Origin: Diadema antillarum | Lineage: Eukaryota | Assembly: GCF_040938485.1 (NCBI RefSeq) | Contig: NW_027271504.1 | Span: 1 to 64,000, forward strand | Direction: 5' to 3' | Length of the DNA: 64,000 nucleotides | In this document: in pieces, positions 42,501-62,100 of the stretch | How the letters are laid out: every line of letters starts with the position of its first letter | Numbering within the stretch: position 1 is the stretch's first letter | Notes under the pieces: generated by a model | What the model was told of the DNA's origin: nothing | The model's input: only the letters and a program-made list of their open reading frames with translations | Database searches by the model: none | Position numbers and translations under genes: made by a program

Positions 42501-44693
42501 CCGGACAGACAACAGAGGCTTCCTCTCACTGCAGTACATGATCAGGAATGAGGACGGACAGATCTCCTTTGTGGAATACTACGTGAGTTGGGACATTTAG
42601 AACTTAACTGTATATGCCATATATTTTTGCAGGGGTTTTATTTTTAATGAATTTCATAAGTCAGGAGTTATTTGGGAATTTAACAGCACACAAAAATATC
42701 AACTCTGATATGATATGAATGTGACATGCATGCTTAATTTCTCTGTTCATTACTATACTCAATGATTACAAATTTAACCACTTGTGAAATTGTTTGGAAG
42801 TCCCGATTCACAAAAAAAAAGTTAGACTCGCTAAATATATGGCATATACAGTACCTCTTCCATTGTTATCAATCTCACACAAACAAGAATTTACCCCATA
42901 GATTATTTGCAAGTGTATTCAAATGTTAGTGGAAACAAGGTATCAATGTACATATTGTCAAATGGCTGAATTTGTGCAAAATTTGACAATTTGTATTATC
43001 AAACACAGCACATGAGAGCCGTGGAACATTTAGCTGTGGGAATGTAATGTACAGTAACTTGTATAGAAATCTTCATTTTATTGCGTATTCAGAGATAACC
43101 AGTATAAATTTCTCCCAAAACATAGCTTGAAAGATCAGCTTTGCATTACAGTTCAGGCTGTACTTATCTATTCTACTGTCACAATGTTTATGTCAATTCG
43201 GACAATCTGGTAGACTGACCTAAATGGATGTCTCTGTTATTGTTCCCTCAAGAAGAGTGAGTGTGTTGAGTACAGTGCACTCCTGTTACAACAAACACGG
43301 TTATAACAAAATTCCACTTACAACAAAGTAAAAATTTAGGCTCCAACATTATCCGCTCTTAGTTTTTTATTATGCCTCCGCAACGAAGTGGCCGGAGGCA
43401 TTATGTTTTCGGGTCGTCCGTCCGTCCGTCCGTCCGTCCGTACGTCCGTACGTCCGTCCGTACGTCCGTCTGTACGTCCGTCCGTACGTCCGTCCGTCCG
43501 TACGTCCGTCCGTCCCGTTTTGTTTTTGTCGATATCTCAAGAACCGTGTGGTGGTTTTACATCAAACTTGGTATGAGGGTATATCCTTGGGGGATAATAC
43601 TTTGTGTGGATTTTAGGGTCACAGGGTCAAAGGTCAAAGGTCACAGGTTATTTTGTGAAAAAAATTGAAATTTCATGTTTTTCTCCATATCTCGCAAATG
43701 GTTCAAGGTATCTTCATGGAACTTAGTATATATGCTTGTATCGATGGGCGGTGATTATCTAGGGAAGTTGGGGGTCATGGGTCAAAGGTCAGGGGGTCAA
43801 AGGTCAAGGTCAACTCCTCAAAATATCACTACTTTCCTTAAAATGCAATGTGCCGGAAGGTTTTTTTTTTTAAACTTGATGTATGGCATGTATTACCCAA
43901 TATATATTTTTGGGGAAGGTTTTTGCCAAAAAGTCAAAGGTCAAAAGGTAAAAGGTCAAGTGAAAGTGCTAAATTGCACTTTTTCCTCCATATCTCGAAA
44001 GTAACTTAAAGGTATCATCATGAAACTTACATATTTATGCATGTTCAACCTAACAGTGATTCTCTTTGGAACTGTGAGGTCAAAGGTCAAAGGCCAGGTT
44101 TAGATAATGCTATTTTCCCATTTGATACTGAAATTATACTTTTTCTCAATACCTTGAAAATTACTCAATGCATAAACTTATAACAGGGTCAAAAGTCAAG
44201 TAAAAATCATCAGTTCCCCAAATACCTGCACTCTGACATTTTAATCATTCATCCAATTGAACCTAGTTCTAGGAAAGTGAACATTCAGCACATTTGTGTC
44301 AAACCTGTCATTTTAATATTTTGCCAATTGTGTGAAACTGTCATCACACATTGTCAAGACATTGAACTATAAACCTATCAGGAGAACCATGCATTATGGC
44401 GGAGGCATATCAGTAGCCGTAGCGATATATCTAGTTGTTTATATGTTTGGTTATAATGAAATTTTGGTATAACGAAAGAAAACTGCCAGTCCCGAGCACT
44501 TTGTTATACATCGTAATGGGAGTTCACTGTAGTCAAGAGTAGCTCCAGCCTCACAACATAGATTATCATGTCGCTTTGTGTTGTTCATCAAATATCCCAA
44601 TGTGATTACAACACTCTCTAAAAATAATTTTGTTTCTTTTTGACTTGTTCTCTGCAGTGTGCTCCTGATGAAGAATATGATGAAGATGGATGA
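33516..44693 (+). CDS. RAD1: Cell-cycle checkpoint protein RAD1 (9-1-1 clamp subunit), 282 aa
   Basis: Exons 33516-33632, 37588-37743, 38180-38274, 38952-39063, 40930-41052, 41828-41892, 42438-42582, 44658-44693. Total 849 nt, GT-AG, phases consistent. Motifs LKAIHF, AKCVQANAFIQ, SPDKPFFRISTFG, KVSIRTDNRGFLSLQYMIRNEDGQ. Alternative in-frame ATG at 33510. Confidence 0.96.
33938..34292 (+). mobile_element. Putative non-autonomous Helitron
   Basis: A|TC start; perfect 9-bp GC stem GACCGCGCC-TAGC-GGCGCGGTC (34260-34281) ending 7 nt before a terminal CTAG. Confidence 0.55.
34292..34460. mobile_element. MITE (Harbinger-like termini)
   Basis: GGGGGGCATTTCATGAAGGAACTTGTCGGATAAA terminal inverted repeat; internal ACTTGTCGGA repeats. 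Confidence 0.8.
35530..36120. mobile_element. TIR-bounded element, unclassified
   Basis: CCTACCATA..AAGATGGTCAACTCTC versus GAGAGTTGACCATCTT..TATGGTAGG. Confidence 0.5.
36304..36423 (+). repeat. 57-bp tandem duplication (2 units + partial)
   Basis: TTCCATCAAACATTCACTCAGATTCAAGATAGTAAACCAGGACCCAGGTT(G/A)CAAGAG occurs twice. Confidence 0.9.
38390..38650 (+). mobile_element. Degenerate tRNA-derived (CORE-like) SINE remnant
   Basis: GTGCCGTTTTGTAAGGCACTTTATCCTCATTGCC resembles the SINE core motif as recalled; no intact A/B boxes seen. Confidence 0.35.
39312..39770. mobile_element. Tc1/mariner-like MITE
   Basis: TA|CAGTTCGACCTCGATTATCCGGC ... GCCGGATAATCGAGGTCGAACTG|TA. Confidence 0.85.
39794..40328. 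mobile_element. Tc1/mariner-like MITE (TA|CAGTG family); relatives at 20635-20822, 24415-24514, 26845-27784, 41924-42119, 43273-44529
   Basis: Perfect 23-bp terminal inverted repeat CAGTGCACTCCCGTTACAACGAA, TA target duplication, many GTTATAAC subterminal motifs. Confidence 0.85.
43363..44436 (-). mobile_element. Helentron-type element, family A, inverted copy nested in a MITE
   Basis: Same termini as 5058-6235 in reverse, with a (GTCC)n tract at about 43415-43515. Confidence 0.75.
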
Positions 44694-45490
44694 TGACAGG
44701 ATAACATGACACAATGGATCAGAGATAGGACTGATTTGAGTTGTAAAATACCTAAGAGGCTTTATTATATTAATAATAATTTGTGCCATATGATTTTTTT
44801 TTTTGTAATTGTTGCTTCAATGTACAGAATAAATACACATATGTTTTTAAACAATATTGGTTTGTACACATTTCACTTCTTGACACATGGTAAATGTTAT
44901 GGTACAATGTTTTGACCACACGCTACATGTATAAAGCTTCAGTACTATTTCGGACTGCATTCACAATGTACACACAAACAACAGCTTCTGGTTATCTTCA
45001 ACCATTTTAGAATTGTTCACAGTCACACGTACTGCTGTAAGCAAACTTTTTCTTGGCTCATAGGTCAAATGGCTATTACAGTTGACACTGCAAGTCCTAC
45101 AACAAAATTTACATAGGGTTTCGACTGCACAAATAAGGTAAGAGTGATGGCTATGTGATAACTCAGGGCATAATTACAATCCTTTCAAACAAACTACTGT
45201 ATGTGCAGTACATCTTGTACCATGATTTTTTTAAAGGCAAAAGCTTCTACAAAATATCAAAATAATACATCATTTTTCTTCACTATTAGGTAATGATGGT
45301 TGCACTGTGTTTCTGAGTGGGAACATGATAAAACAGCACATTAAACTTTGAAACTTCCTAAAAGGCTGACACTGAGACTAAGACATTAACCCTGGAATTT
45401 TAAATTTCATACAACTAGTGGTACAATGTACACTTGCCATCACCTTAAGTTGAAAACAACATATTGTATATTTTATCTCGTAATGTACGG

Positions 45491-45575
45491 TAGAGAATTC
45501 AGCCATTGGCTGCGCATTAGCCATTGGCTGAATTTGCGTAATATGAGAGGCCGTTCCGCGCGCAATCGCCATCTT
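45491..45575 (+). repeat. DIRS left inverted terminal repeat core
   Basis: 85/85 reverse-complement identity to 50288-50372; preceded by a 22-bp unique left extension, 45469-45490. Confidence 0.95.
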
Positions 45576-45703
45576 CGTTCCAGCGCAATGTTCGATCGCG
45601 AAGCGATTTTTATCTGACCGAAAAATCGGAAAATATCATCGAAATCTGCGGAAATACGGAACTGAATTCGTGCTCTCTTACAAGCGTGATTATCGTTCTC
45701 AGC

Positions 45704-47035
45704 ATGGATGAACCAGCTGACAAATCGGAGAAGGCAAAAGCCAAAAAAGATACCGAGCTGTGTGAGCCTAAGGCCAGCCCAGCTCCGGCAGCAAAGAAGA
45801 AGGCTGCAGGCAAAACTCTGTCTAGCGGCGGGAGGCCTAAGGCATCCCGCCCCGCGGCTTCGGGGAAGGCACAGCCGAACCCGCCCGCACCAGCTGCTAC
45901 CGCTCCCAACCCGACTGTGACTACAGCGGAAAATAGCACGGAGGTTATGTCCCGCATTGGGAAACTCGAGTCAATGTTCGAAAAAATGATCGAGACTTTG
46001 AGCACTCCTCATCATGGAGAACAACATGCCAACACGCCGCGGGATTGTTTTAGTGAATATGGCGACTGCGACACACAAAGGGGAAGCAGCTCACCACCCG
46101 TCATAGAACTGGCGGATAATCGCAGCGTGGCTGATTTCCTATCGGCAAACCGCGATGACGCGGTCAGCTTGTTTTCGGACGTAGGCCTACAGGAGGCAGA
46201 TAAAGACAAACGGCCAGAATTCAAGATACCACGAATGGCTCAGAAATTCGTGGCTCCGTCCGGGATAGGGGAACCACTAGATGAGGATGTCGCGGACACC
46301 ATTGTGTATATGATGGGACAAAAACTTGACCAGAAATCTCTCGACGAAGCAGCAACTCGCTACCCCTGCCCATCTAACTGCACATGTCTAGAAACCCCTA
46401 AAGTGAACAGCACTATCTGGGAGAACATCTCGACGGGGACGAGACACAGGGATCTGAAACTACAAATGATCCAATCATCCCTCTTGAAAGGGATAAACGC
46501 GTTTGCTCGTACCCTTCCAGCAACTTTGTCTGAAGCTCAGCAGGATGCTATAGCTTTTCTCTGCGATGCAAACTTCTCCCTCAACTGCATGAGAAAGGAC
46601 AGCATAAAGCCTGACATGAACTCAAATTTCCACCACCTGTGCAAGCCCTCTCACAAAGTGACAAAGTACTTGTTTGGAGATGACCTGGGGCGTCAAGTGA
46701 AAGAGATCCAAGAACAAAGGAAAACAATGTCAGGCATGATGAAATCACGCTTCACACGAGAGCAATCACGGTTCCAGCCGTACAAGAAACCGGATGTGAC
46801 ATCTCGCCGTCAATACACTTCGACTGGGTTCACCCGCCCGTTGGGGAGGGGTTATGACCGCCGAACATCACATTCCAACCCCATGGCCGGTTCATCTGCA
46901 CAGCCTTTTTTAGGGAAGGCTTGGAGGGGGAGACCTCGAGATCCTCCTCACACTTACACACCGACAGCAGCAAGGGAGGGTGGCAACAAGCAGCCAACCT
47001 ACCACAGGCAGAGCCAAAGCCAGGGGAGGAAATAG
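45704..47035 (+). CDS. DIRS ORF1, Gag-like protein (443 aa from first ATG)
   Basis: Long ORF at the gag position. Lys/Ala/Pro-rich N-terminus, central PKVNSTIW..RDLKLQMIQ block resembling DIRS ORF1 / LAP2alpha-like domain as recalled, Arg-rich C-terminus with no zinc knuckle. Confidence 0.88.
   Translation: MDEPADKSEKAKAKKDTELCEPKASPAPAAKKKAAGKTLSSGGRPKASRPAASGKAQPNPPAPAATAPNPTVTTAENSTEVMSRIGKLESMFEKMIETLSTPHHGEQHANTPRDCFSEYGDCDTQRGSSSPPVIELADNRSVADFLSANRDDAVSLFSDVGLQEADKDKRPEFKIPRMAQKFVAPSGIGEPLDEDVADTIVYMMGQKLDQKSLDEAATRYPCPSNCTCLETPKVNSTIWENISTGTRHRDLKLQMIQSSLLKGINAFARTLPATLSEAQQDAIAFLCDANFSLNCMRKDSIKPDMNSNFHHLCKPSHKVTKYLFGDDLGRQVKEIQEQRKTMSGMMKSRFTREQSRFQPYKKPDVTSRRQYTSTGFTRPLGRGYDRRTSHSNPMAGSSAQPFLGKAWRGRPRDPPHTYTPTAAREGGNKQPTYHRQSQSQGRK
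46906..46949 (+). promoter_or_regulatory. Candidate programmed -1 ribosomal frameshift signal (U UUU UUA + downstream stem)
   Basis: CCT TTT TTA GGG in the gag frame; a -1 shift gives TTT TTT AGG GAA GGC TTG, which is the pol frame; possible stem 46924-46931 / 46942-46949. Confidence 0.7.
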
Positions 47036-48981
47036 AACAGGTAGGTGACTATGAACACAACATAGATAACGATCTAGTTACAACACCAGCTGTCGTCGGA
47101 GGTCGTCTGAAGCCATTTTTCCCTGCTTGGGAAAATATCACGAGAGACTCACACATTATTCAAGCAGTTCAAGGCTATACAATAGAATTTGACTCAGAAA
47201 AATTTCCCCCTTCTCGAGAAAAACCTCTGCGCTCTTACAAGCGGAATGCTGAAGAAACAGCCAAGATTGACCATGAGATTCTGGTTCTGGAAGAAAAACA
47301 GGTCATTGAAAAATGTGCCCATGAAGAAGGGGAATTTATTTCAGAGGTTTTCACGAGACCAAAAAAGAATGGAGGAGTTCGATTAATTCTTGACCTGTCC
47401 GAACTCAACAAAAGTGTTCAGTACCAACACTTTAAAATGGATAATATTCAATCTGGTATTCTACTCCTCTCAAAAGGGTGTTATATGGCTTCAGTAGACC
47501 TCCGTGATGCATACTACACAATTCCCATTCACTTAGACTCTCGTAAATATCTCCGCTTCGTATGGAGAAACCAATTGTGGCAGTTCAAAGCTTTGCCAAA
47601 TGGCTTATCTTCCGCCCCAAGACTGTTCACCAAAATACTAAAACCAGTGCTTGCCTTACTAAGACAACAGGGGCACACAGTTTTGTCGTACTTGGACGAC
47701 ACACTGATAATTGGGAACAATAAAGCAGACACTCGCTCAGCAGTGCAAGCCACCACTGACCTTTTGACTAGTCTAGGGTTCATTATTCACTCAGAGAAAT
47801 CGGTACTTGAACCATCCCGTGAGATTGAATTTCTGGGTTTCCATTTAAATACATCTGAAATGAGAATCACCCTCCCAGCCAGTAAAAGCAATGACATTCA
47901 AGATGCATGTCGATCCTTACTTGCTAATAACAAACCTAGTATCCGGGAGGTAGCTAAAGTCATTGGGAAGATTGTGGCTGCCTTACCAGCATCTCAGTAC
48001 GGCCCCTTGCATTACAGGCAGCTGGAAAGGGAAAAAATCAGAGCCCTGAGAAAACAGAAAGGACATTTCGATAGACATATGAGCCTATCAAATAGAGCCA
48101 AGGCGGAACTAGTTTGGTGGTCATCCCATGCACATCTCGTGTCTAAACCCCTGTACCCAGGGAAAGTATCAAAAGAAATAAGAACAGATGCTAGTGGACA
48201 AGGTTGGGGTGCCACAGACCTGCAATCCAAGACAGGTGGTAGATGGAATGCTCAAGAATTAGCAAGAGCAGCAGGTAATGAAATAAACTATCTGGAAATG
48301 CTAGCAGCCGGTTTGGGACTCAAAAGCTTCTGTTCAAATGTCAGAGATGCACATATACTGTTGAGATTAGACAACACCACAGCGGTGACATACTTGAATA
48401 ACATGGGCGGCGTCAAGTCTGAAGCATGTAACGAAATGGCGTTGCAAATTTGGGATTGGTGCAGTAGACGACAAATTTGGATAACAGCATCTCACTTAGC
48501 AGGCTCTAAGAACACAGAAGCTGATACGATGTCAAGGAAATTCAATGACAATATAGAATGGATGCTAGACAAGACAATATTCAATGAGATAGTGCAGAGG
48601 TATGGGTTACCAAACGTAGACCTTTTTGCCACCAGACTGAATGCCCAGCTCCCAACATACGTCTCCTGGAGACCAGATCCAGGGGCATGGGCAGTAGACG
48701 CATTCACTATTGACTGGGGACCCCTAGTATTTTATGCCTTTCCCCCATTTAGCTTGGTTGCAAAGTGTCTCCAAAAAATCAGACAAGATGGCGCTAGGGG
48801 AATTTTGATAGTGCCAAATTGGCCAACACAGCCCTGGTATACCGTACTACGTAACATGCTATTGGAGGAGCCCTGGGTATTGCGAAAACACCAGTTGTTA
48901 ACCCAACCCATTACAGGTAGACCCCATCCACTTACACATCTCTCCCTCTTATGTTGCAGGGTTGGAGCAAACATTTCATAG
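46912..48981 (+). CDS. DIRS ORF2 pol: reverse transcriptase, RNase H and DNA adenine-methyltransferase-like domain; -1 frame relative to gag
   Basis: VGGRL..W start motif; PKKNGGVRLILDL; ASVDLRDAYY; LPNGLSSAPRLFTK; YLDD at 47689-47700; RNase H TDAS/INYLEM/DNTTAV; VDLFA..YAFPPF..VPNWPTQPWY. Frame open from 46858; first ATG lies about 170 codons in. Confidence 0.95.
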   Translation, partial: REGLEGETSRSSSHLHTDSSKGGWQQAANLPQAEPKPGEEIEQVGDYEHNIDNDLVTTPAVVGGRLKPFFPAWENITRDSHIIQAVQGYTIEFDSEKFPPSREKPLRSYKRNAEETAKIDHEILVLEEKQVIEKCAHEEGEFISEVFTRPKKNGGVRLILDLSELNKSVQYQHFKMDNIQSGILLLSKGCYMASVDLRDAYYTIPIHLDSRKYLRFVWRNQLWQFKALPNGLSSAPRLFTKILKPVLALLRQQGHTVLSYLDDTLIIGNNKADTRSAVQATTDLLTSLGFIIHSEKSVLEPSREIEFLGFHLNTSEMRITLPASKSNDIQDACRSLLANNKPSIREVAKVIGKIVAALPASQYGPLHYRQLEREKIRALRKQKGHFDRHMSLSNRAKAELVWWSSHAHLVSKPLYPGKVSKEIRTDASGQGWGATDLQSKTGGRWNAQELARAAGNEINYLEMLAAGLGLKSFCSNVRDAHILLRLDNTTAVTYLNNMGGVKSEACNEMALQIWDWCSRRQIWITASHLAGSKNTEADTMSRKFNDNIEWMLDKTIFNEIVQRYGLPNVDLFATRLNAQLPTYVSWRPDPGAWAVDAFTIDWGPLVFYAFPPFSLVAKCLQKIRQDGARGILIVPNWPTQPWYTVLRNMLLEEPWVLRKHQLLTQPITGRPHPLTHLSLLCCRVGANIS
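47041..48959 (+). other. Candidate spliceosomal intron within DIRS that removes pol
   Basis: Donor CAG|GTAGGT; branch-like CTTAC (A at 48934); pyrimidine tract and TTGCAG|G; joins the pol frame to the YR frame in phase 0. Confidence 0.6.
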
Positions 48982-59100: not shown

Positions 59101-62100
59101 ACAAAAAATGAAAATATTCAATAACTTCAAGGTGAAGGTCAAGAATGAAGTATTCTTACCCCCTCAGGAGGCCGTTCTACAAGAGCACGGTAAAAACAGG
59201 TTGTCTGAGGGTACAGCGCCATCACAAGCTGTATAAGTGTGAATAGATAAAGAGAATTACATGCCAGAAAAATCCACACAGGAAAATATAAAAAATATTA
59301 TACATCATGACATTCCAGTTAAGTTGTACTTTGCAAGTGTCAAGAGTCTAGTTTTCATTGTCATATATGATAGTGCACAAAGTAATTTGAGTCTCAAGTA
59401 ACATACCACAGGCACCACAGCAATGACATACATGGCTATCATTACACTGTACTGCATACATCTCTGCCACTCCTGCCCTTGCTATGAACATCTAAGCTCT
59501 CATTCCACTGTGACAGATTATAGTTACATACTAGTATTACAAATACATAATTATCTACATACATTCGCAACCCAAACCCTGATCCAAATTCCGTTCTTAC
59601 AGTGCCTTTCTTGAACAGAGCATCTGGGTTGCTCTCTGGATTTGCTTTCATGAGCGGCAATGGAACTATCCTCCGGCGTGACAAGAGATGTCTCCTGGAA
59701 AAAGACCAAAGTAACATAGAACACTTTCATACAAAAGAAAAATTCGTTTTGTAATCACTGTTTTTTATAATCATGAATCTTGATTGTAGTCTTGATTTGA
59801 GTTACACAACGTTCAGGCGCTTGAATGTGAAAAAGGTAATGTAAAGCTCTTCTAGATGATAGAAAAACCTCTCCTGTAATCAGATTTATAAATTCCCGTT
59901 GAATGTAATCTTGATTTAAGTTTTGGAAGCACCAGACCTGTCAATCAAACTCACAAAGTGCATGCTATCAAGTGCAGATCAGGTTGATTGCATTTACATT
60001 TTGCCCGGTCTCTGGTAAGAAGTGAATGAAGGGTTGAACTCGGCTCTTTGAAGGTCAAGTCTTTAATATAAAAACTGCGCATCAAGAATTGAAAACACTT
60101 CAAATTTGCAAATCAAGATTCTAAACTCAAGATTACAACAATTTGTTTTCAGATGCAAGAAATTCCTGGTTACAATCATGATTCTTCTAATAGGGATTCT
60201 TCTAAAAGGGATTACAATCATGATTACACAACATATTTTTCTACCATCTGTAAGGGGGGTCTGGGGCAATTACCCAGGACCCTTCCCCTGAGCCTAACCC
60301 TAATCCTCATCCTGAACCTAATCCTAACCCTAACCCCAACTCTAACCCTAAAAGCCAACCCTGACCATAATCTCTACTCTAACTTTATTATCAATATTAA
60401 TAACCGGTATTTAGCTGGGGGGTAATTGCCCTCAGGGATTATGAACCAATATTACATTAAGATTTACTGGCATTCAAATAAAAGATGGACCACTTGCATT
60501 TGCAATGGCAAATCTGCTGCTTACACAGATAAACTTTATGTTGTATCTACATATTTCCCTCACTTGTTCCTTTTGTCATGTCATCCAAGCATTTCAGAGA
60601 AATGTTCATAAAATTTCACTTGGTCTTTGACTTAGGGAGTTTAAGCTGACTTGCAATAACTATAGTACGTATTCAAAGTACCAATTACTGTACCATCTCA
60701 TTTTCTATGGTCAAGTCATGCATACATTCACAGTAATCTTACCAAAATTGTTCTTTAGTTACNNNNNNNNNNNNNNNNNNNNNNNNNNNNNNNNNNNNNN
60801 NNNNNNNNNNNNNNNNNNNNNNNNNNNNNNNNNNNNNNNNNNNNNNNNNNNNNNNNNNNNNNNNNNNNNNNNNNNNNNNNNNNNNNNNNNNNNNNNNNNN
60901 NNNNNNNNNNNNNNNNNNNNNNNNNNNNNNNNNNNNNNNNNNNNNNNNNNNNNNNNNNNNNNNNNNNNNNNNNNNCTCCCACTTCACAATCAAAGAAAAA
61001 TACATTTTGAGAATACTGTACAGCTCTGTCTTATGCAAAATGCAAGATAATGATCAACTGTTCAAACATACTCTTTTCCCTCTTCATCGATGTCATCCAC
61101 TTCATATTTGTTAGTGCTGGAGTTGAAGGATATGACTTCCGCCAGAATCCAGTTCTCATCGCCGTCGCTGCCTCGAACTCTGGCCGCCACGTAGTCTCCT
61201 GGTTTACATACATAGTTTGACTCTGCCGGAACTGATCCACATAAATGAGGTGGTTTTCTGAGGAGACACAGAGCAAAAAATGAAAAGATGAGTTTATGCA
61301 GCATTTTCAAGATTGGTACAAACTAGTGCTGCAATACCTCCATTATCTGACATCCATACAAATGTGACAATAAGTTCCAAGTTGATTACCAAATATAGAA
61401 AAATAGATAGCAGGTACCAAAATCTTTAATTCCAGATGCCCATCTTAAATACTACATTTTATTTACAGTGGGCTAGGGTTACGTCTTGCCTGGATTTTGG
61501 AACTTTCCTTTCATATGCTGCAAACAATGTGGTCATACACATGGGAAAATATGACATCATACAAGTTGACTCACTCATTTTCAGTTCGCCCTATCCAGAG
61601 AGGGAGTGTCATGGCAGTCTGCTGCAGCATGTTCATTAAGACCCCACGCCTCATGATCTTGCGAGGTCCATCCGTGTCAGAAAAATGGCCAGCGTTCCTT
61701 GCCTGGAGACGCTGTTCATTTCGTAACGTTTTGATGGCATTAATCTTGTCCAGCGATTTCCTCAAACATCTTGGGGCAAAACAGACAGACAAACTATGGG
61801 TGAGACGATGTACGAGCAAGTTGCATAGGATTGGCTAGGGCGTGAAGTGAAATGCAAGATACTGGTATAGAACACTGAGATATACAATTAAAAGTATTAC
61901 ATCTATGGAGTGAAATAATTGTTCAGTCCAGCAAGAGCTGAATTTCAACTCGTACAACATTTATAACAACAACAACAAAAATTCTTGTAATCTGTCTTGC
62001 TGGATAGACACTTCAAGTATAATTGATCAGGACTTTAAGGTCTCCAACAAATAAGATGTGCTCAACTAAGATCTCTCGATCATGTTGTTTACATGTAAAT

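What the first reader, a model, noticed from the sequence alone, without database searches (positions are those of the whole stretch)
46858..47035. DIRS pol is entered through an HIV-1-type U UUU UUA -1 slippery site
Seen: pol has no ATG until about codon 174, well inside RT, so it cannot start conventionally. Its frame is -1 to gag and opens at 46858, after the TGA at 46855. Inside this short overlap, T TTT TTA (46906-46912) sits exactly in the X XXY YYZ register of gag. A -1 slip gives an uninterrupted Gag-Pol of about 1090 aa. A possible 8-bp stem (46924-46931 / 46942-46949) or an alternative bulged stem from 46920 follows. Established: U UUU UUA is the HIV-1 gag-pol slippery heptamer, and TTTTTTAGGGAAG matches that site as I recall it. 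Inference: programmed -1 frameshifting in a tyrosine-recombinase retrotransposon. I do not recall this being demonstrated for DIRS elements but cannot check.
Basis: partly seen in the sequence, partly recalled or inferred. Interest (0 to 1): 0.9.

Follow-up and report, generated by a model that had tools for sequence, protein, structure and literature searches.

The report
Ribosomal frameshift site in DIRS retrotransposon
A young, intact DIRS-type jumping gene in the sea urchin Diadema antillarum almost certainly makes its reverse transcriptase by letting ribosomes slip back one base at a conserved seven-base site, the same trick retroviruses use, and the same site type is found in 51 of 52 related element families.

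Summary
ORF1 ("gag", 45704-47035) and pol (open 46858-48981) overlap by 178 nt with pol in the -1 frame. The heptamer at 46906-46912 sits in the X XXY YYZ register of ORF1. The first pol ATG (47437) is an invariant Met inside the RT core.

Taken alone, such a heptamer arises by chance in about 15% of shuffles. The comparative evidence is much stronger:
- 65 related loci, forming 52 families at 36-70% pol identity, share the -1 arrangement.
- 51 of the 52 families carry a canonical heptamer in register in the overlap. The types are TTTTTTA 30, TTTAAAC 8, AAAAAAC 7, TTTTTTG 3, GGGTTTT 2 and TTTTTTT 1, and they switch along the tree.
- The families include Strongylocentrotus purpuratus and Lytechinus pictus copies.
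- Six further D. antillarum copies (99.2-99.6% identical) keep every ORF open and show no change in the overlap.

A sister clade does have a covarying hairpin 7 nt after its heptamer.

The likeness to the HIV-1 site was not tested, because that comparison is barred.

Verdict: programmed -1 ribosomal frameshifting giving an ORF1-Pol fusion, confidence about 0.85. It is a new member of a known kind. No held paper describes it for DIRS elements.

The parts
45470..50432 (+). Complete DIRS1-like retrotransposon, 4963 bp, with all three ORFs open (0 breaks counted)
   Evidence: The ends were set by comparison with six other genomic copies that have different flanks. RT and tyrosine recombinase domains were found.
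45470..45575 (+). Left inverted terminal repeat
   Evidence: It is the inverted-repeat arm paired with 50288-50401 at 89% complementarity. Its outer end was trimmed to the element end found.
45704..47035 (+). ORF1 ('gag'), 443 aa plus stop
   Evidence: NCBI names the identical protein 'uncharacterized protein [Diadema antillarum]'. It has no Pfam family and no fold match.
46858..47035 (+). ORF1/pol overlap, 178 nt, with pol in the -1 frame
   Evidence: No difference was seen here among the 7 genomic copies.
46906..46912 (+). Slippery heptamer in the X XXY YYZ register of ORF1; proposed site of the -1 slip
   Evidence: It is positionally conserved in relatives, 168-219 nt before the conserved pol start in the close clade. 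All 30 copies of this heptamer found in the overlaps are in the slip register.
46924..46949 (+). Candidate 8-bp hairpin after an 11-nt spacer (unsupported as a stimulator)
   Evidence: Energy is -13.2 kcal/mol with z = -0.76, and 44 of 200 shuffles fold as well. In six related sequences 60% of cells pair, the same as shuffles, with no compensatory change.
46858..48981 (+). pol open frame (707 codons plus stop): leader, RT, then weak RNase H-like and methyltransferase-like hints. It has no ATG before 47437.
   Evidence: There are 1015 homologues with E <= 1e-10.
47359..47847 (+). Reverse transcriptase domain (Pfam RVT_1, pol aa 168-330)
   Evidence: E = 6.5e-23.
48951..49961 (+). Tyrosine recombinase ORF, 336 aa. 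It is -1 to pol and its own ATG lies 30 nt before the pol stop.
50039..50187 (+). Internal complementary region (complementary to both termini)
   Evidence: 50039-50124 is 98% complementary to 45463-45548. 50112-50187 is 99% complementary to 50360-50435.
50288..50432 (+). Right inverted terminal repeat with its extension

Best explanation
The element is an intact, recently amplified DIRS1-like retrotransposon of the sea urchin Diadema antillarum.

Proposed mechanism (inferred):
- Ribosomes start at the ORF1 ATG (45704).
- Most terminate at 47033-35 and make ORF1 protein.
- A fraction slip one base back on the heptamer at 46906-46912 by tandem tRNA slippage, continue in the pol frame, and make a fusion of about 1092 aa: ORF1, RT, RNase H-like and methyltransferase-like parts.
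- The element encodes no protease, so the fusion probably acts uncleaved. The slip sets the ratio of ORF1 protein to polymerase.

Shown here: the frames, the register, the conservation and turnover of the heptamer in relatives, the lack of a usable pol start codon, and purifying selection on pol.

Inferred: that the slip happens, how efficient it is, and the fate of the fusion. Whether an RNA structure stimulates the slip in this clade is open.
For: Anatomy:
- pol is -1 to ORF1 with a 178-nt overlap, and the heptamer is in register.
- The first pol ATG is the invariant Met194 inside the RT domain.

Relatives:
- 65 loci in 52 families share the -1 arrangement, and 51 of the 52 have an in-register canonical heptamer in the overlap.
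- The in-register heptamer rate is 0.0253 per codon in overlaps against 0.00375 in upstream ORF1.
- The six heptamer types (TTTTTTA 30, TTTAAAC 8, AAAAAAC 7, TTTTTTG 3, GGGTTTT 2, TTTTTTT 1) cluster and switch on the pol tree.
- All 30 copies of the window's heptamer in the overlaps are in the slip register.
- Elsewhere in these elements only 8.6% of 174 Phe-Leu pairs are encoded TTT-TTA, against 30 of 33 Phe-Leu slip sites.
- In 27 of 51 families the first pol ATG lies inside conserved pol.
- Named sea urchin genomes (S. purpuratus, L. pictus) show the same site.

Same genome:
- Six more copies at 99.2-99.6% identity keep the 443-aa ORF1, the 707-codon pol frame and the heptamer.
- Synonymous to nonsynonymous differences are 24:7 in ORF1 and 59:14 in pol, with 0 differences in the overlap.
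- The assembly rests on PacBio HiFi reads (PMC13511894), which argues against a homopolymer error.

Sister TTTAAAC clade: a stem starts 8 nt after the heptamer in 8 of 8 families, with compensatory changes.
Against: - No protein, ribosome or RNA data were available, so the slip itself is unobserved.
- The downstream stem in this element has an 11-nt spacer. From general knowledge, 5-9 nt is usual.
- The stem is not more stable than shuffles (z = -0.76 to -1.15) and shows no covariation.
- The family-wide excess of structure is modest: mean z is -0.79 against -0.44 for controls, p = 0.008.
- The motif around the heptamer also encodes a conserved ORF1 peptide (Pro-Phe-Leu-Gly). Part of its conservation is therefore protein-level.
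- In 26 of 51 families the site could also read as a pyrimidine tract plus AG, which is splice-acceptor-like.
Confidence: 0.85

Rival explanations
1. The conserved pyrimidine run plus AG at the site is a 3' splice acceptor. On this reading pol is translated from a spliced, sub-genomic RNA that supplies an upstream ATG, not by frameshifting.
For: In the window and in 26 of 51 families the site reads as a pyrimidine tract followed by AG then G. [quoted passage not shown]
Against: 25 of 51 families have sites that cannot be acceptors: the AAAAAAC, TTTAAAC, GGGTTTT, TTTTTTG and TTTTTTT types, plus 4 TTTTTTA sites not followed by G. An acceptor would not need the ORF1 codon register, yet 30 of 30 copies keep it. 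No donor was identified. Six Logan contigs carry ORF1-pol-YR colinear with the genome, although their library type is unknown.
Confidence: 0.05
2. RNA polymerase stutters on the run of six T, producing a share of transcripts with one base more or fewer that put pol in frame (transcriptional slippage).
For: The site is a homopolymer run in 34 of 51 families.
Against: The TTTAAAC (8), GGGTTTT (2) and partly the AAAAAAC clades fit tandem tRNA slippage rather than polymerase stuttering. TTTAAAC in particular has no long homopolymer. Stuttering needs no codon register, yet the register is kept throughout. From general knowledge, six bases is short for efficient stuttering.
Confidence: 0.04
3. pol is translated on its own by internal initiation, either reinitiation or a non-AUG start in the leader, or from the ATG at 47437. 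On this reading the heptamer is only the coding of a conserved ORF1 peptide.
For: 20 of 51 families do have an ATG between the heptamer and the conserved pol start. The ORF1 Pro-Phe-Leu-Gly motif is conserved.
Against: The ATG is neither conserved in position nor present in 27 of 51 families, including this one. Here the first ATG would delete about 115 conserved residues and the start of the RT domain. Codon choice at the site departs strongly from Phe-Leu coding elsewhere. Clades with other heptamers encode other peptides. From general knowledge, an internal start after a 1.2-kb ORF is unusual for eukaryotic ribosomes.
Confidence: 0.04
4. The arrangement is accidental: a decayed copy, or an assembly indel in the T-run of what is really a single ORF1-pol reading frame.
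For: Six related families do have ORF1 and pol fused in one frame. Homopolymers are error-prone in some sequencing technologies.
Against: Seven independent copies in a HiFi assembly share the same run length. Dozens of families from independent assemblies agree. ORF1 continues for 24-150 nt beyond the heptamer to a stop, with a conserved tail. Synonymous changes are in excess.
Confidence: 0.02

Closest known systems
gag-pol -1 programmed ribosomal frameshifting of retroviruses and Ty3/gypsy-type LTR retrotransposons (general knowledge; the survey by Gao et al. 2003, RNA 9:1422, cited in PMC6238403, could not be read)
   Same: The downstream polymerase ORF is in the -1 frame with a short overlap. 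An X XXY YYZ heptamer sits in the upstream frame's register. Heptamer types turn over between lineages. A downstream hairpin is present in at least one clade. DIRS RT is related to that of Ty3/gypsy elements (PMC3266345).
   Different: The element has no protease and no DDE integrase (PMC3783388), so the fusion is probably not processed. ORF1 shows no detectable capsid or zinc-knuckle likeness. A stimulatory structure in this clade is unproven.
Ngaro elements: the YR ORF overlaps the end of RT/RH in the -1 frame, and programmed frameshifting was proposed (Poulter and Butler 2015, as quoted in PMC13003380)
   Same: It belongs to the same order of tyrosine-recombinase retrotransposons and involves a -1 overlap. 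The mechanism was likewise proposed from sequence only.
   Different: That proposal concerns a different junction (pol to YR, not ORF1 to pol), and the quoted text names no slippery site. In the DIRS families studied here the pol-YR junction is also -1 in 45 of 45, but it mostly lacks canonical heptamers.
[quoted passage not shown]
   Same: It is the founding DIRS element, and frameshifting was suggested there to reach an overlapping ORF.
   Different: The direction is different (+1) and so is the ORF pair. No signal was described.
HIV-1 gag-pol frameshift site
   Same: This was not tested here.
   Different: No comparison could be made, because the virus's sequence may not be fetched or typed. 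Whatever the letters, the likeness would be convergent use of a common heptamer, since relatives use five other heptamers.

Membership tests
Canonical eukaryotic -1 programmed ribosomal frameshift signal | The downstream ORF is in the -1 frame, overlaps the upstream ORF, and lacks its own usable start | tested here: met
   The overlap is 178 nt, and the first ATG (47437) lies inside the RT domain.
Canonical eukaryotic -1 programmed ribosomal frameshift signal | An X XXY YYZ heptamer in the register of the upstream frame, inside the overlap | tested here: met
   The heptamer is at 46906-46912.
Canonical eukaryotic -1 programmed ribosomal frameshift signal | The heptamer is kept, or replaced by another canonical heptamer, in relatives beyond chance and beyond amino-acid constraint | tested here: met
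   51 of 52 families; 6.7-fold enrichment; codon choice; type switching; register 30/0/0; named urchin genomes.
Canonical eukaryotic -1 programmed ribosomal frameshift signal | A stimulatory RNA structure about 5-9 nt downstream | tested here: inconclusive
   In the window there is an 8-bp stem after 11 nt, with z = -0.76 and no covariation. RNAalifold found no shared structure in the close clade. The sister TTTAAAC clade has a covarying stem from +8 in 8 of 8 families. Family-wide mean z is -0.79 against -0.44.
Canonical eukaryotic -1 programmed ribosomal frameshift signal | The transframe product or the frameshift efficiency has been observed | not testable with these tools
   No proteomic, ribosome-profiling or RNA data are reachable from these tools.
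DIRS1-like retrotransposon (order DIRS) | Reverse transcriptase plus tyrosine recombinase, with no protease and no DDE integrase | tested here: met
   One search found RVT_1 at 6.5e-23 and Phage_integrase at 1.4e-11. No other enzyme family appeared.
DIRS1-like retrotransposon (order DIRS) | Inverted terminal repeats plus an internal complementary region that matches both termini | tested here: met
   (I1, I2, I3). The ends were fixed, and the termini are ATT...ATT, as is common in PMC3266345.
DIRS1-like retrotransposon (order DIRS) | A methyltransferase domain after RT/RNase H | tested here: inconclusive
   Only sub-threshold hits were found: PCIF1_WW at 0.077, RT_RNaseH at 0.095 and Dam at 0.9. 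Homologues carry precomputed PF05869, PF12237 and PF17917 hits.
Retroviral-type Gag (capsid fold or zinc knuckle) for ORF1 | Sequence or fold likeness to known capsid or nucleocapsid proteins | tested here: not met
   Pfam gave 0 families even at E <= 1. The AlphaFold model has mean pLDDT 57.6 and is confident only for a helical core at aa 230-350. There is no PDB fold match at E <= 0.001. The name 'gag' is positional.
HIV-1 gag-pol frameshift site | The same heptamer and the same following bases | not tested

The most novel reading that the evidence does not exclude
-1 ribosomal frameshifting is the ancestral and near-universal route to polymerase in metazoan DIRS1-like elements. Because there is no protease, these elements would replicate with an uncleaved ORF1-RT fusion. 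The third ORF (tyrosine recombinase) is locked in the -1 frame to pol in 45 of 45 families but mostly lacks a slippery heptamer. On this reading it is reached by a second, different mechanism such as termination-reinitiation, non-canonical recoding or a spliced RNA. One small element would then use two distinct recoding or expression devices.
Probability: 0.2. Interest if true: 0.65.

Novelty: new member of a known kind. Interest (0 to 1): 0.45.

Why it matters
DIRS elements are a whole order of retrotransposons, and how their polymerase is expressed has been left vague. ORFs are drawn as 'overlapping', and a frameshift has been guessed only for other junctions (PMC5006619; Poulter and Butler 2015 as quoted in PMC13003380). 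No paper in the held library contains both 'DIRS' and 'slippery'.

A conserved, phylogenetically switching heptamer gives a concrete and testable expression model. It also explains why annotation pipelines miss or truncate pol in these elements. It adds a protease-less element to the list of frameshift users, which raises the question of what an uncleaved ORF1-RT fusion does.

The mechanism itself is classical, so a specialist would be interested rather than astonished.

Tried and rejected
- **RNAalifold on six close relatives** returned only a spurious helix that includes the heptamer, with no covariation.
- **MAFFT plus RNAalifold on the TTTAAAC clade** failed because loop lengths differ. 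I replaced it with offset-anchored pair tables from single-sequence folds. Those tables lean towards pairing.
- **Rfam gathering scan of the window** gave 0 hits.
- **ORF1** has no Pfam family. Its AlphaFold model has low confidence and no PDB fold match, so a capsid likeness could not be shown.
- **The bacterial-type promoter and terminator scan** near the left end has no meaning for a eukaryotic element and was ignored.
- **Literature:**
  - Poulter and Butler 2015 and Gao et al. 2003 are not held.
An earlier passing statement of an ORF1-pol frameshift in DIRS therefore cannot be excluded.
  - Five open DIRS papers were checked and say nothing on it.
- **Viral collections:** I did not scan viral contigs with the RT, to avoid pulling in animal viruses.
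- I passed the heptamer in RNA letters as text-search terms to paper reading. The paper was not held and nothing came back.
- **Correction:** the binomial was computed for 30 of 36 sites. The correct count of Phe-Leu slip sites in the 51 families is 33 (30 TTT-TTA and 3 TTT-TTG), which only strengthens the result.
Full report
**1. What is there**

The window is the first 64 kb of contig JBFRCO010000616.1 of the Diadema antillarum (long-spined sea urchin) assembly GCA_040938485.1. This follows from three results:
- Locus L097 equals window 42951-55961.
- The assembly is identified and described as HiFi-based in PMC13511894.
- NCBI names the identical ORF1 protein 'uncharacterized protein [Diadema antillarum]'.

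At 45470-50432 lies a 4963-bp element. Its ends are fixed by comparison with six other genomic copies whose flanks all differ.

It has the anatomy of a DIRS1-like retrotransposon:
- inverted terminal repeats at 45470-45575 and 50288-50432;
- an internal complementary region at 50039-50187 that matches both termini at 98-99%;
- a 443-aa ORF1 at 45704-47035;
- a 707-codon pol frame at 46858-48981, with Pfam RVT_1 (E = 6.5e-23) and sub-threshold RNase H-like and methyltransferase-like hints;
- a 336-aa tyrosine recombinase ORF at 48951-49961.

No ORF is broken; the count of breaks is 0.

**2. The observation**

- pol is -1 to ORF1.
- The pol frame opens at 46858, after the TGA at 46855-57.
- The overlap is 178 nt.
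- The heptamer at 46906-46912 is in the X XXY YYZ register of ORF1.
- The first pol-frame ATG is at 47437. It encodes the Met that is invariant in an alignment of 15 pol proteins and lies inside the RT domain.
- By arithmetic, 403 + 689 codons give about 1092 residues. I built no joined sequence.

For this single locus the chance of some in-register canonical heptamer is 0.15, and of this heptamer 0.003 (shuffles). Alone the site is suggestive and not more than that.

**3. Relatives**

Sources:
- A protein search with pol found 1015 homologues with E <= 1e-10.
- I fetched 14 loci by exact-protein look-up.
- I fetched 80 loci from metagenome contigs using a pol alignment.

Each locus was anchored with the conserved start of pol.

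The main pattern:
- 65 loci, including the window, have a long upstream ORF with pol in its -1 frame and a short overlap of 46-304 nt.
- They fall into 52 distinct families at 36-70% identity to the window in the pol segment used as the anchor.
- 51 of the 52 have at least one canonical heptamer in the ORF1 register inside the overlap.
- The in-register rate is 60 per 2371 codons in overlaps, against 64 per 17069 codons in ORF1 upstream.
- The other two registers have 20 and 5. The 20 are in the register of in-frame AAA-AAA and TTT-TTT codon pairs; I did not check which they are.

Heptamer types among the 51 families: TTTTTTA 30, TTTAAAC 8, AAAAAAC 7, TTTTTTG 3, GGGTTTT 2, TTTTTTT 1.

On a neighbour-joining tree of the RT region:
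- TTTAAAC, GGGTTTT and most AAAAAAC families form clades.
- Single switches are scattered elsewhere.
- The type has therefore changed about eight times while the register was always kept.

All 30 copies of the window's heptamer found in overlaps are in the slip register.

In the window's own clade the heptamer sits 168-219 nt before the conserved pol start, so it is positionally homologous.

Copies in Strongylocentrotus purpuratus and Lytechinus pictus genomes show the same heptamer, register and -1 pol frame.

**4. Is the conservation only protein coding?**

The site encodes Pro-Phe-Leu-Gly in ORF1, and Phe, Leu and Gly are invariant or nearly so among ORF1 homologues. That constraint alone does not explain the nucleotides:
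- Elsewhere in these elements Phe-Leu is written TTT-TTA in only 15 of 174 cases (8.6%).
- At the slip site it is TTT-TTA in 30 of 33 families and TTT-TTG in the other 3.
- The binomial used 36 sites and is therefore conservative.
- Clades with other heptamers encode other peptides.

There is an ascertainment caveat, since sites were picked as heptamers. At most one family (L054) is missed in this way.

**5. No alternative start, and pol is under selection**

In 27 of 51 families the first pol-frame ATG lies inside conserved pol. In 20 it lies somewhere in the leader, and in 4 upstream of the heptamer. No position is conserved.

In the D. antillarum genome:
- Six further copies are 99.2-99.6% identical to the window copy.
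- All of them have the 443-aa ORF1, the 707-codon pol frame and the heptamer.
- Differences from the window copy are mostly synonymous: 24:7 in ORF1 and 59:14 in pol.
- None falls in the overlap.

These counts are per copy and not independent events. The copies were found through an identical recombinase protein, so that ORF says nothing.

A polymerase that is kept by selection yet has no start codon needs an unconventional entry.

**6. RNA structure**

However:
- 44 of 200 shuffles fold as well.
- Longer windows give z = -0.88 and -1.15.
- The spacer is 11 nt.
- On an alignment of six close relatives the pairs hold in 60% of cells, the same as shuffles, with no compensatory change.
- RNAalifold finds nothing credible.
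- The G-run and C-run involved also encode conserved ORF1 residues.

Across 51 families the 80 nt after the heptamer are slightly more structured than control segments: mean z is -0.79 against -0.44, Mann-Whitney p = 0.008.

In the TTTAAAC clade a stem starts at +8 in 8 of 8 families, with pair changes on both sides at several positions. This rests on single-sequence folds, which lean towards pairing.

So a stimulatory hairpin is credible for the group but unproven for this element.

**7. Rivals**

- **Splice acceptor.** The block of C-C, the T-run, then A-G-G could read as a 3' splice site. That is possible in only 26 of 51 families, and it would not require the codon register.
- **Transcriptional stuttering.** It does not fit TTTAAAC or GGGTTTT sites, nor the register.
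- **Internal initiation.** It fails on the ATG survey.
- **Assembly error.** It fails on seven HiFi copies and on dozens of independent assemblies.

Six families have ORF1 and pol in a single frame, and one has them in the same frame separated by a stop. From general knowledge, such a mix of strategies is usual among retroelements.

**8. Known or new**

The mechanism is classical for retroviruses and LTR retrotransposons (general knowledge).

For the DIRS order I found only two sequence-based guesses:
- a proposed -1 frameshift into the recombinase ORF of Ngaro elements (Poulter and Butler 2015, quoted in PMC13003380);
- a possible +1 frameshift in Dictyostelium DIRS-1, 'not determined experimentally' (PMC5006619).

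Other checks:
- Open DIRS surveys do not mention an ORF1-pol frameshift.
- No held paper contains both 'DIRS' and 'slippery', or DIRS1 with 'ribosomal frameshifting'.
- The older subscription papers could not be read, so a passing earlier remark is possible.

I rate the finding a new member of a known kind.

**9. What could not be done**

- The letter-by-letter likeness to the HIV-1 site was not tested, because that sequence may be neither fetched nor typed.
- No expression or protein data were reachable.
- ORF1 could not be shown to be capsid-like.
- The N run at 60763-60975 was left alone. The assembly paper reports no gaps, so the run is presumably masked on purpose.

Noticed in passing
window 48921-48981 (pol/YR overlap), and the same junction in 45 related families: The recombinase ORF is in the -1 frame to pol in 45 of 45 families, with open-frame overlap in 43. 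A canonical in-register heptamer is present in only 15 of them and is absent in the window. In the window the YR ATG lies 30 nt before the pol stop. How the recombinase is translated is unexplained.
   Followed up: partly
window about 48930-48960; L004, L009, L010, L011 at the same junction: A pyrimidine tract followed by TTGCAG then G, which is splice-acceptor-like, is conserved at the YR start in five families. The same bases are dual-coding for the pol C-end and the YR N-end, so the conservation may be protein-level only.
   Followed up: partly
L095-L101 (D. antillarum) and L102:6548-8053 (S. purpuratus): In these records, ORF1 and YR are called as separate genes. pol is either not called at all or is called truncated from an internal ATG. 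The frameshift is not modelled.
   Followed up: partly
L062, L075, L078, L082, L084, L087; L045: Six related families have the pol frame open for 1.4-1.9 kb upstream of the conserved pol start, so ORF1 and pol are fused in one frame. In L045 a 413-codon ORF lies in the same frame, separated by a stop. These are alternative expression strategies within the group.
   Followed up: partly
window 46950-46967: A CA-rich block 35-50 nt after the heptamer is conserved at nucleotide level in the window, L004, L007 and L010. It codes for conserved residues in both frames. No role is known.
   Followed up: no
window 45704-47035 (ORF1 protein): Only a helical core at aa 230-350 is predicted with confidence. 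The last 90 or so residues, which include the slip site at about residue 402, are predicted disordered. There is no PDB fold match.
   Followed up: yes
L095, L096, L098, L101; window about 42951-44693 and from 53106 onwards: Several copies of the family lie within the span of host genes: one encoding a 1703-aa product, a SNF2/CSB-like gene, a tetraspanin gene and a NudC-like gene. The window copy sits between a Rad1-like gene and an SGF29-like gene.
   Followed up: no
window 43399-43537 and 43616-44159: A CGTC-type microsatellite and dispersed GGTCAAAGGTCA-type repeats with about 150-nt spacing lie just upstream of the element.
   Followed up: no
window 60763-60975: There is a run of 213 N, although the assembly paper reports no gaps. 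It is presumably masked on purpose. I neither filled it nor looked it up.
   Followed up: no
L001-L006: Six Logan contigs come from six runs of one series (SRR28370570-84). They carry the identical pol protein and the same ORF1-pol-YR layout with the heptamer. If the libraries are RNA, these are unspliced, unedited transcripts. The library type is unknown.
   Followed up: no
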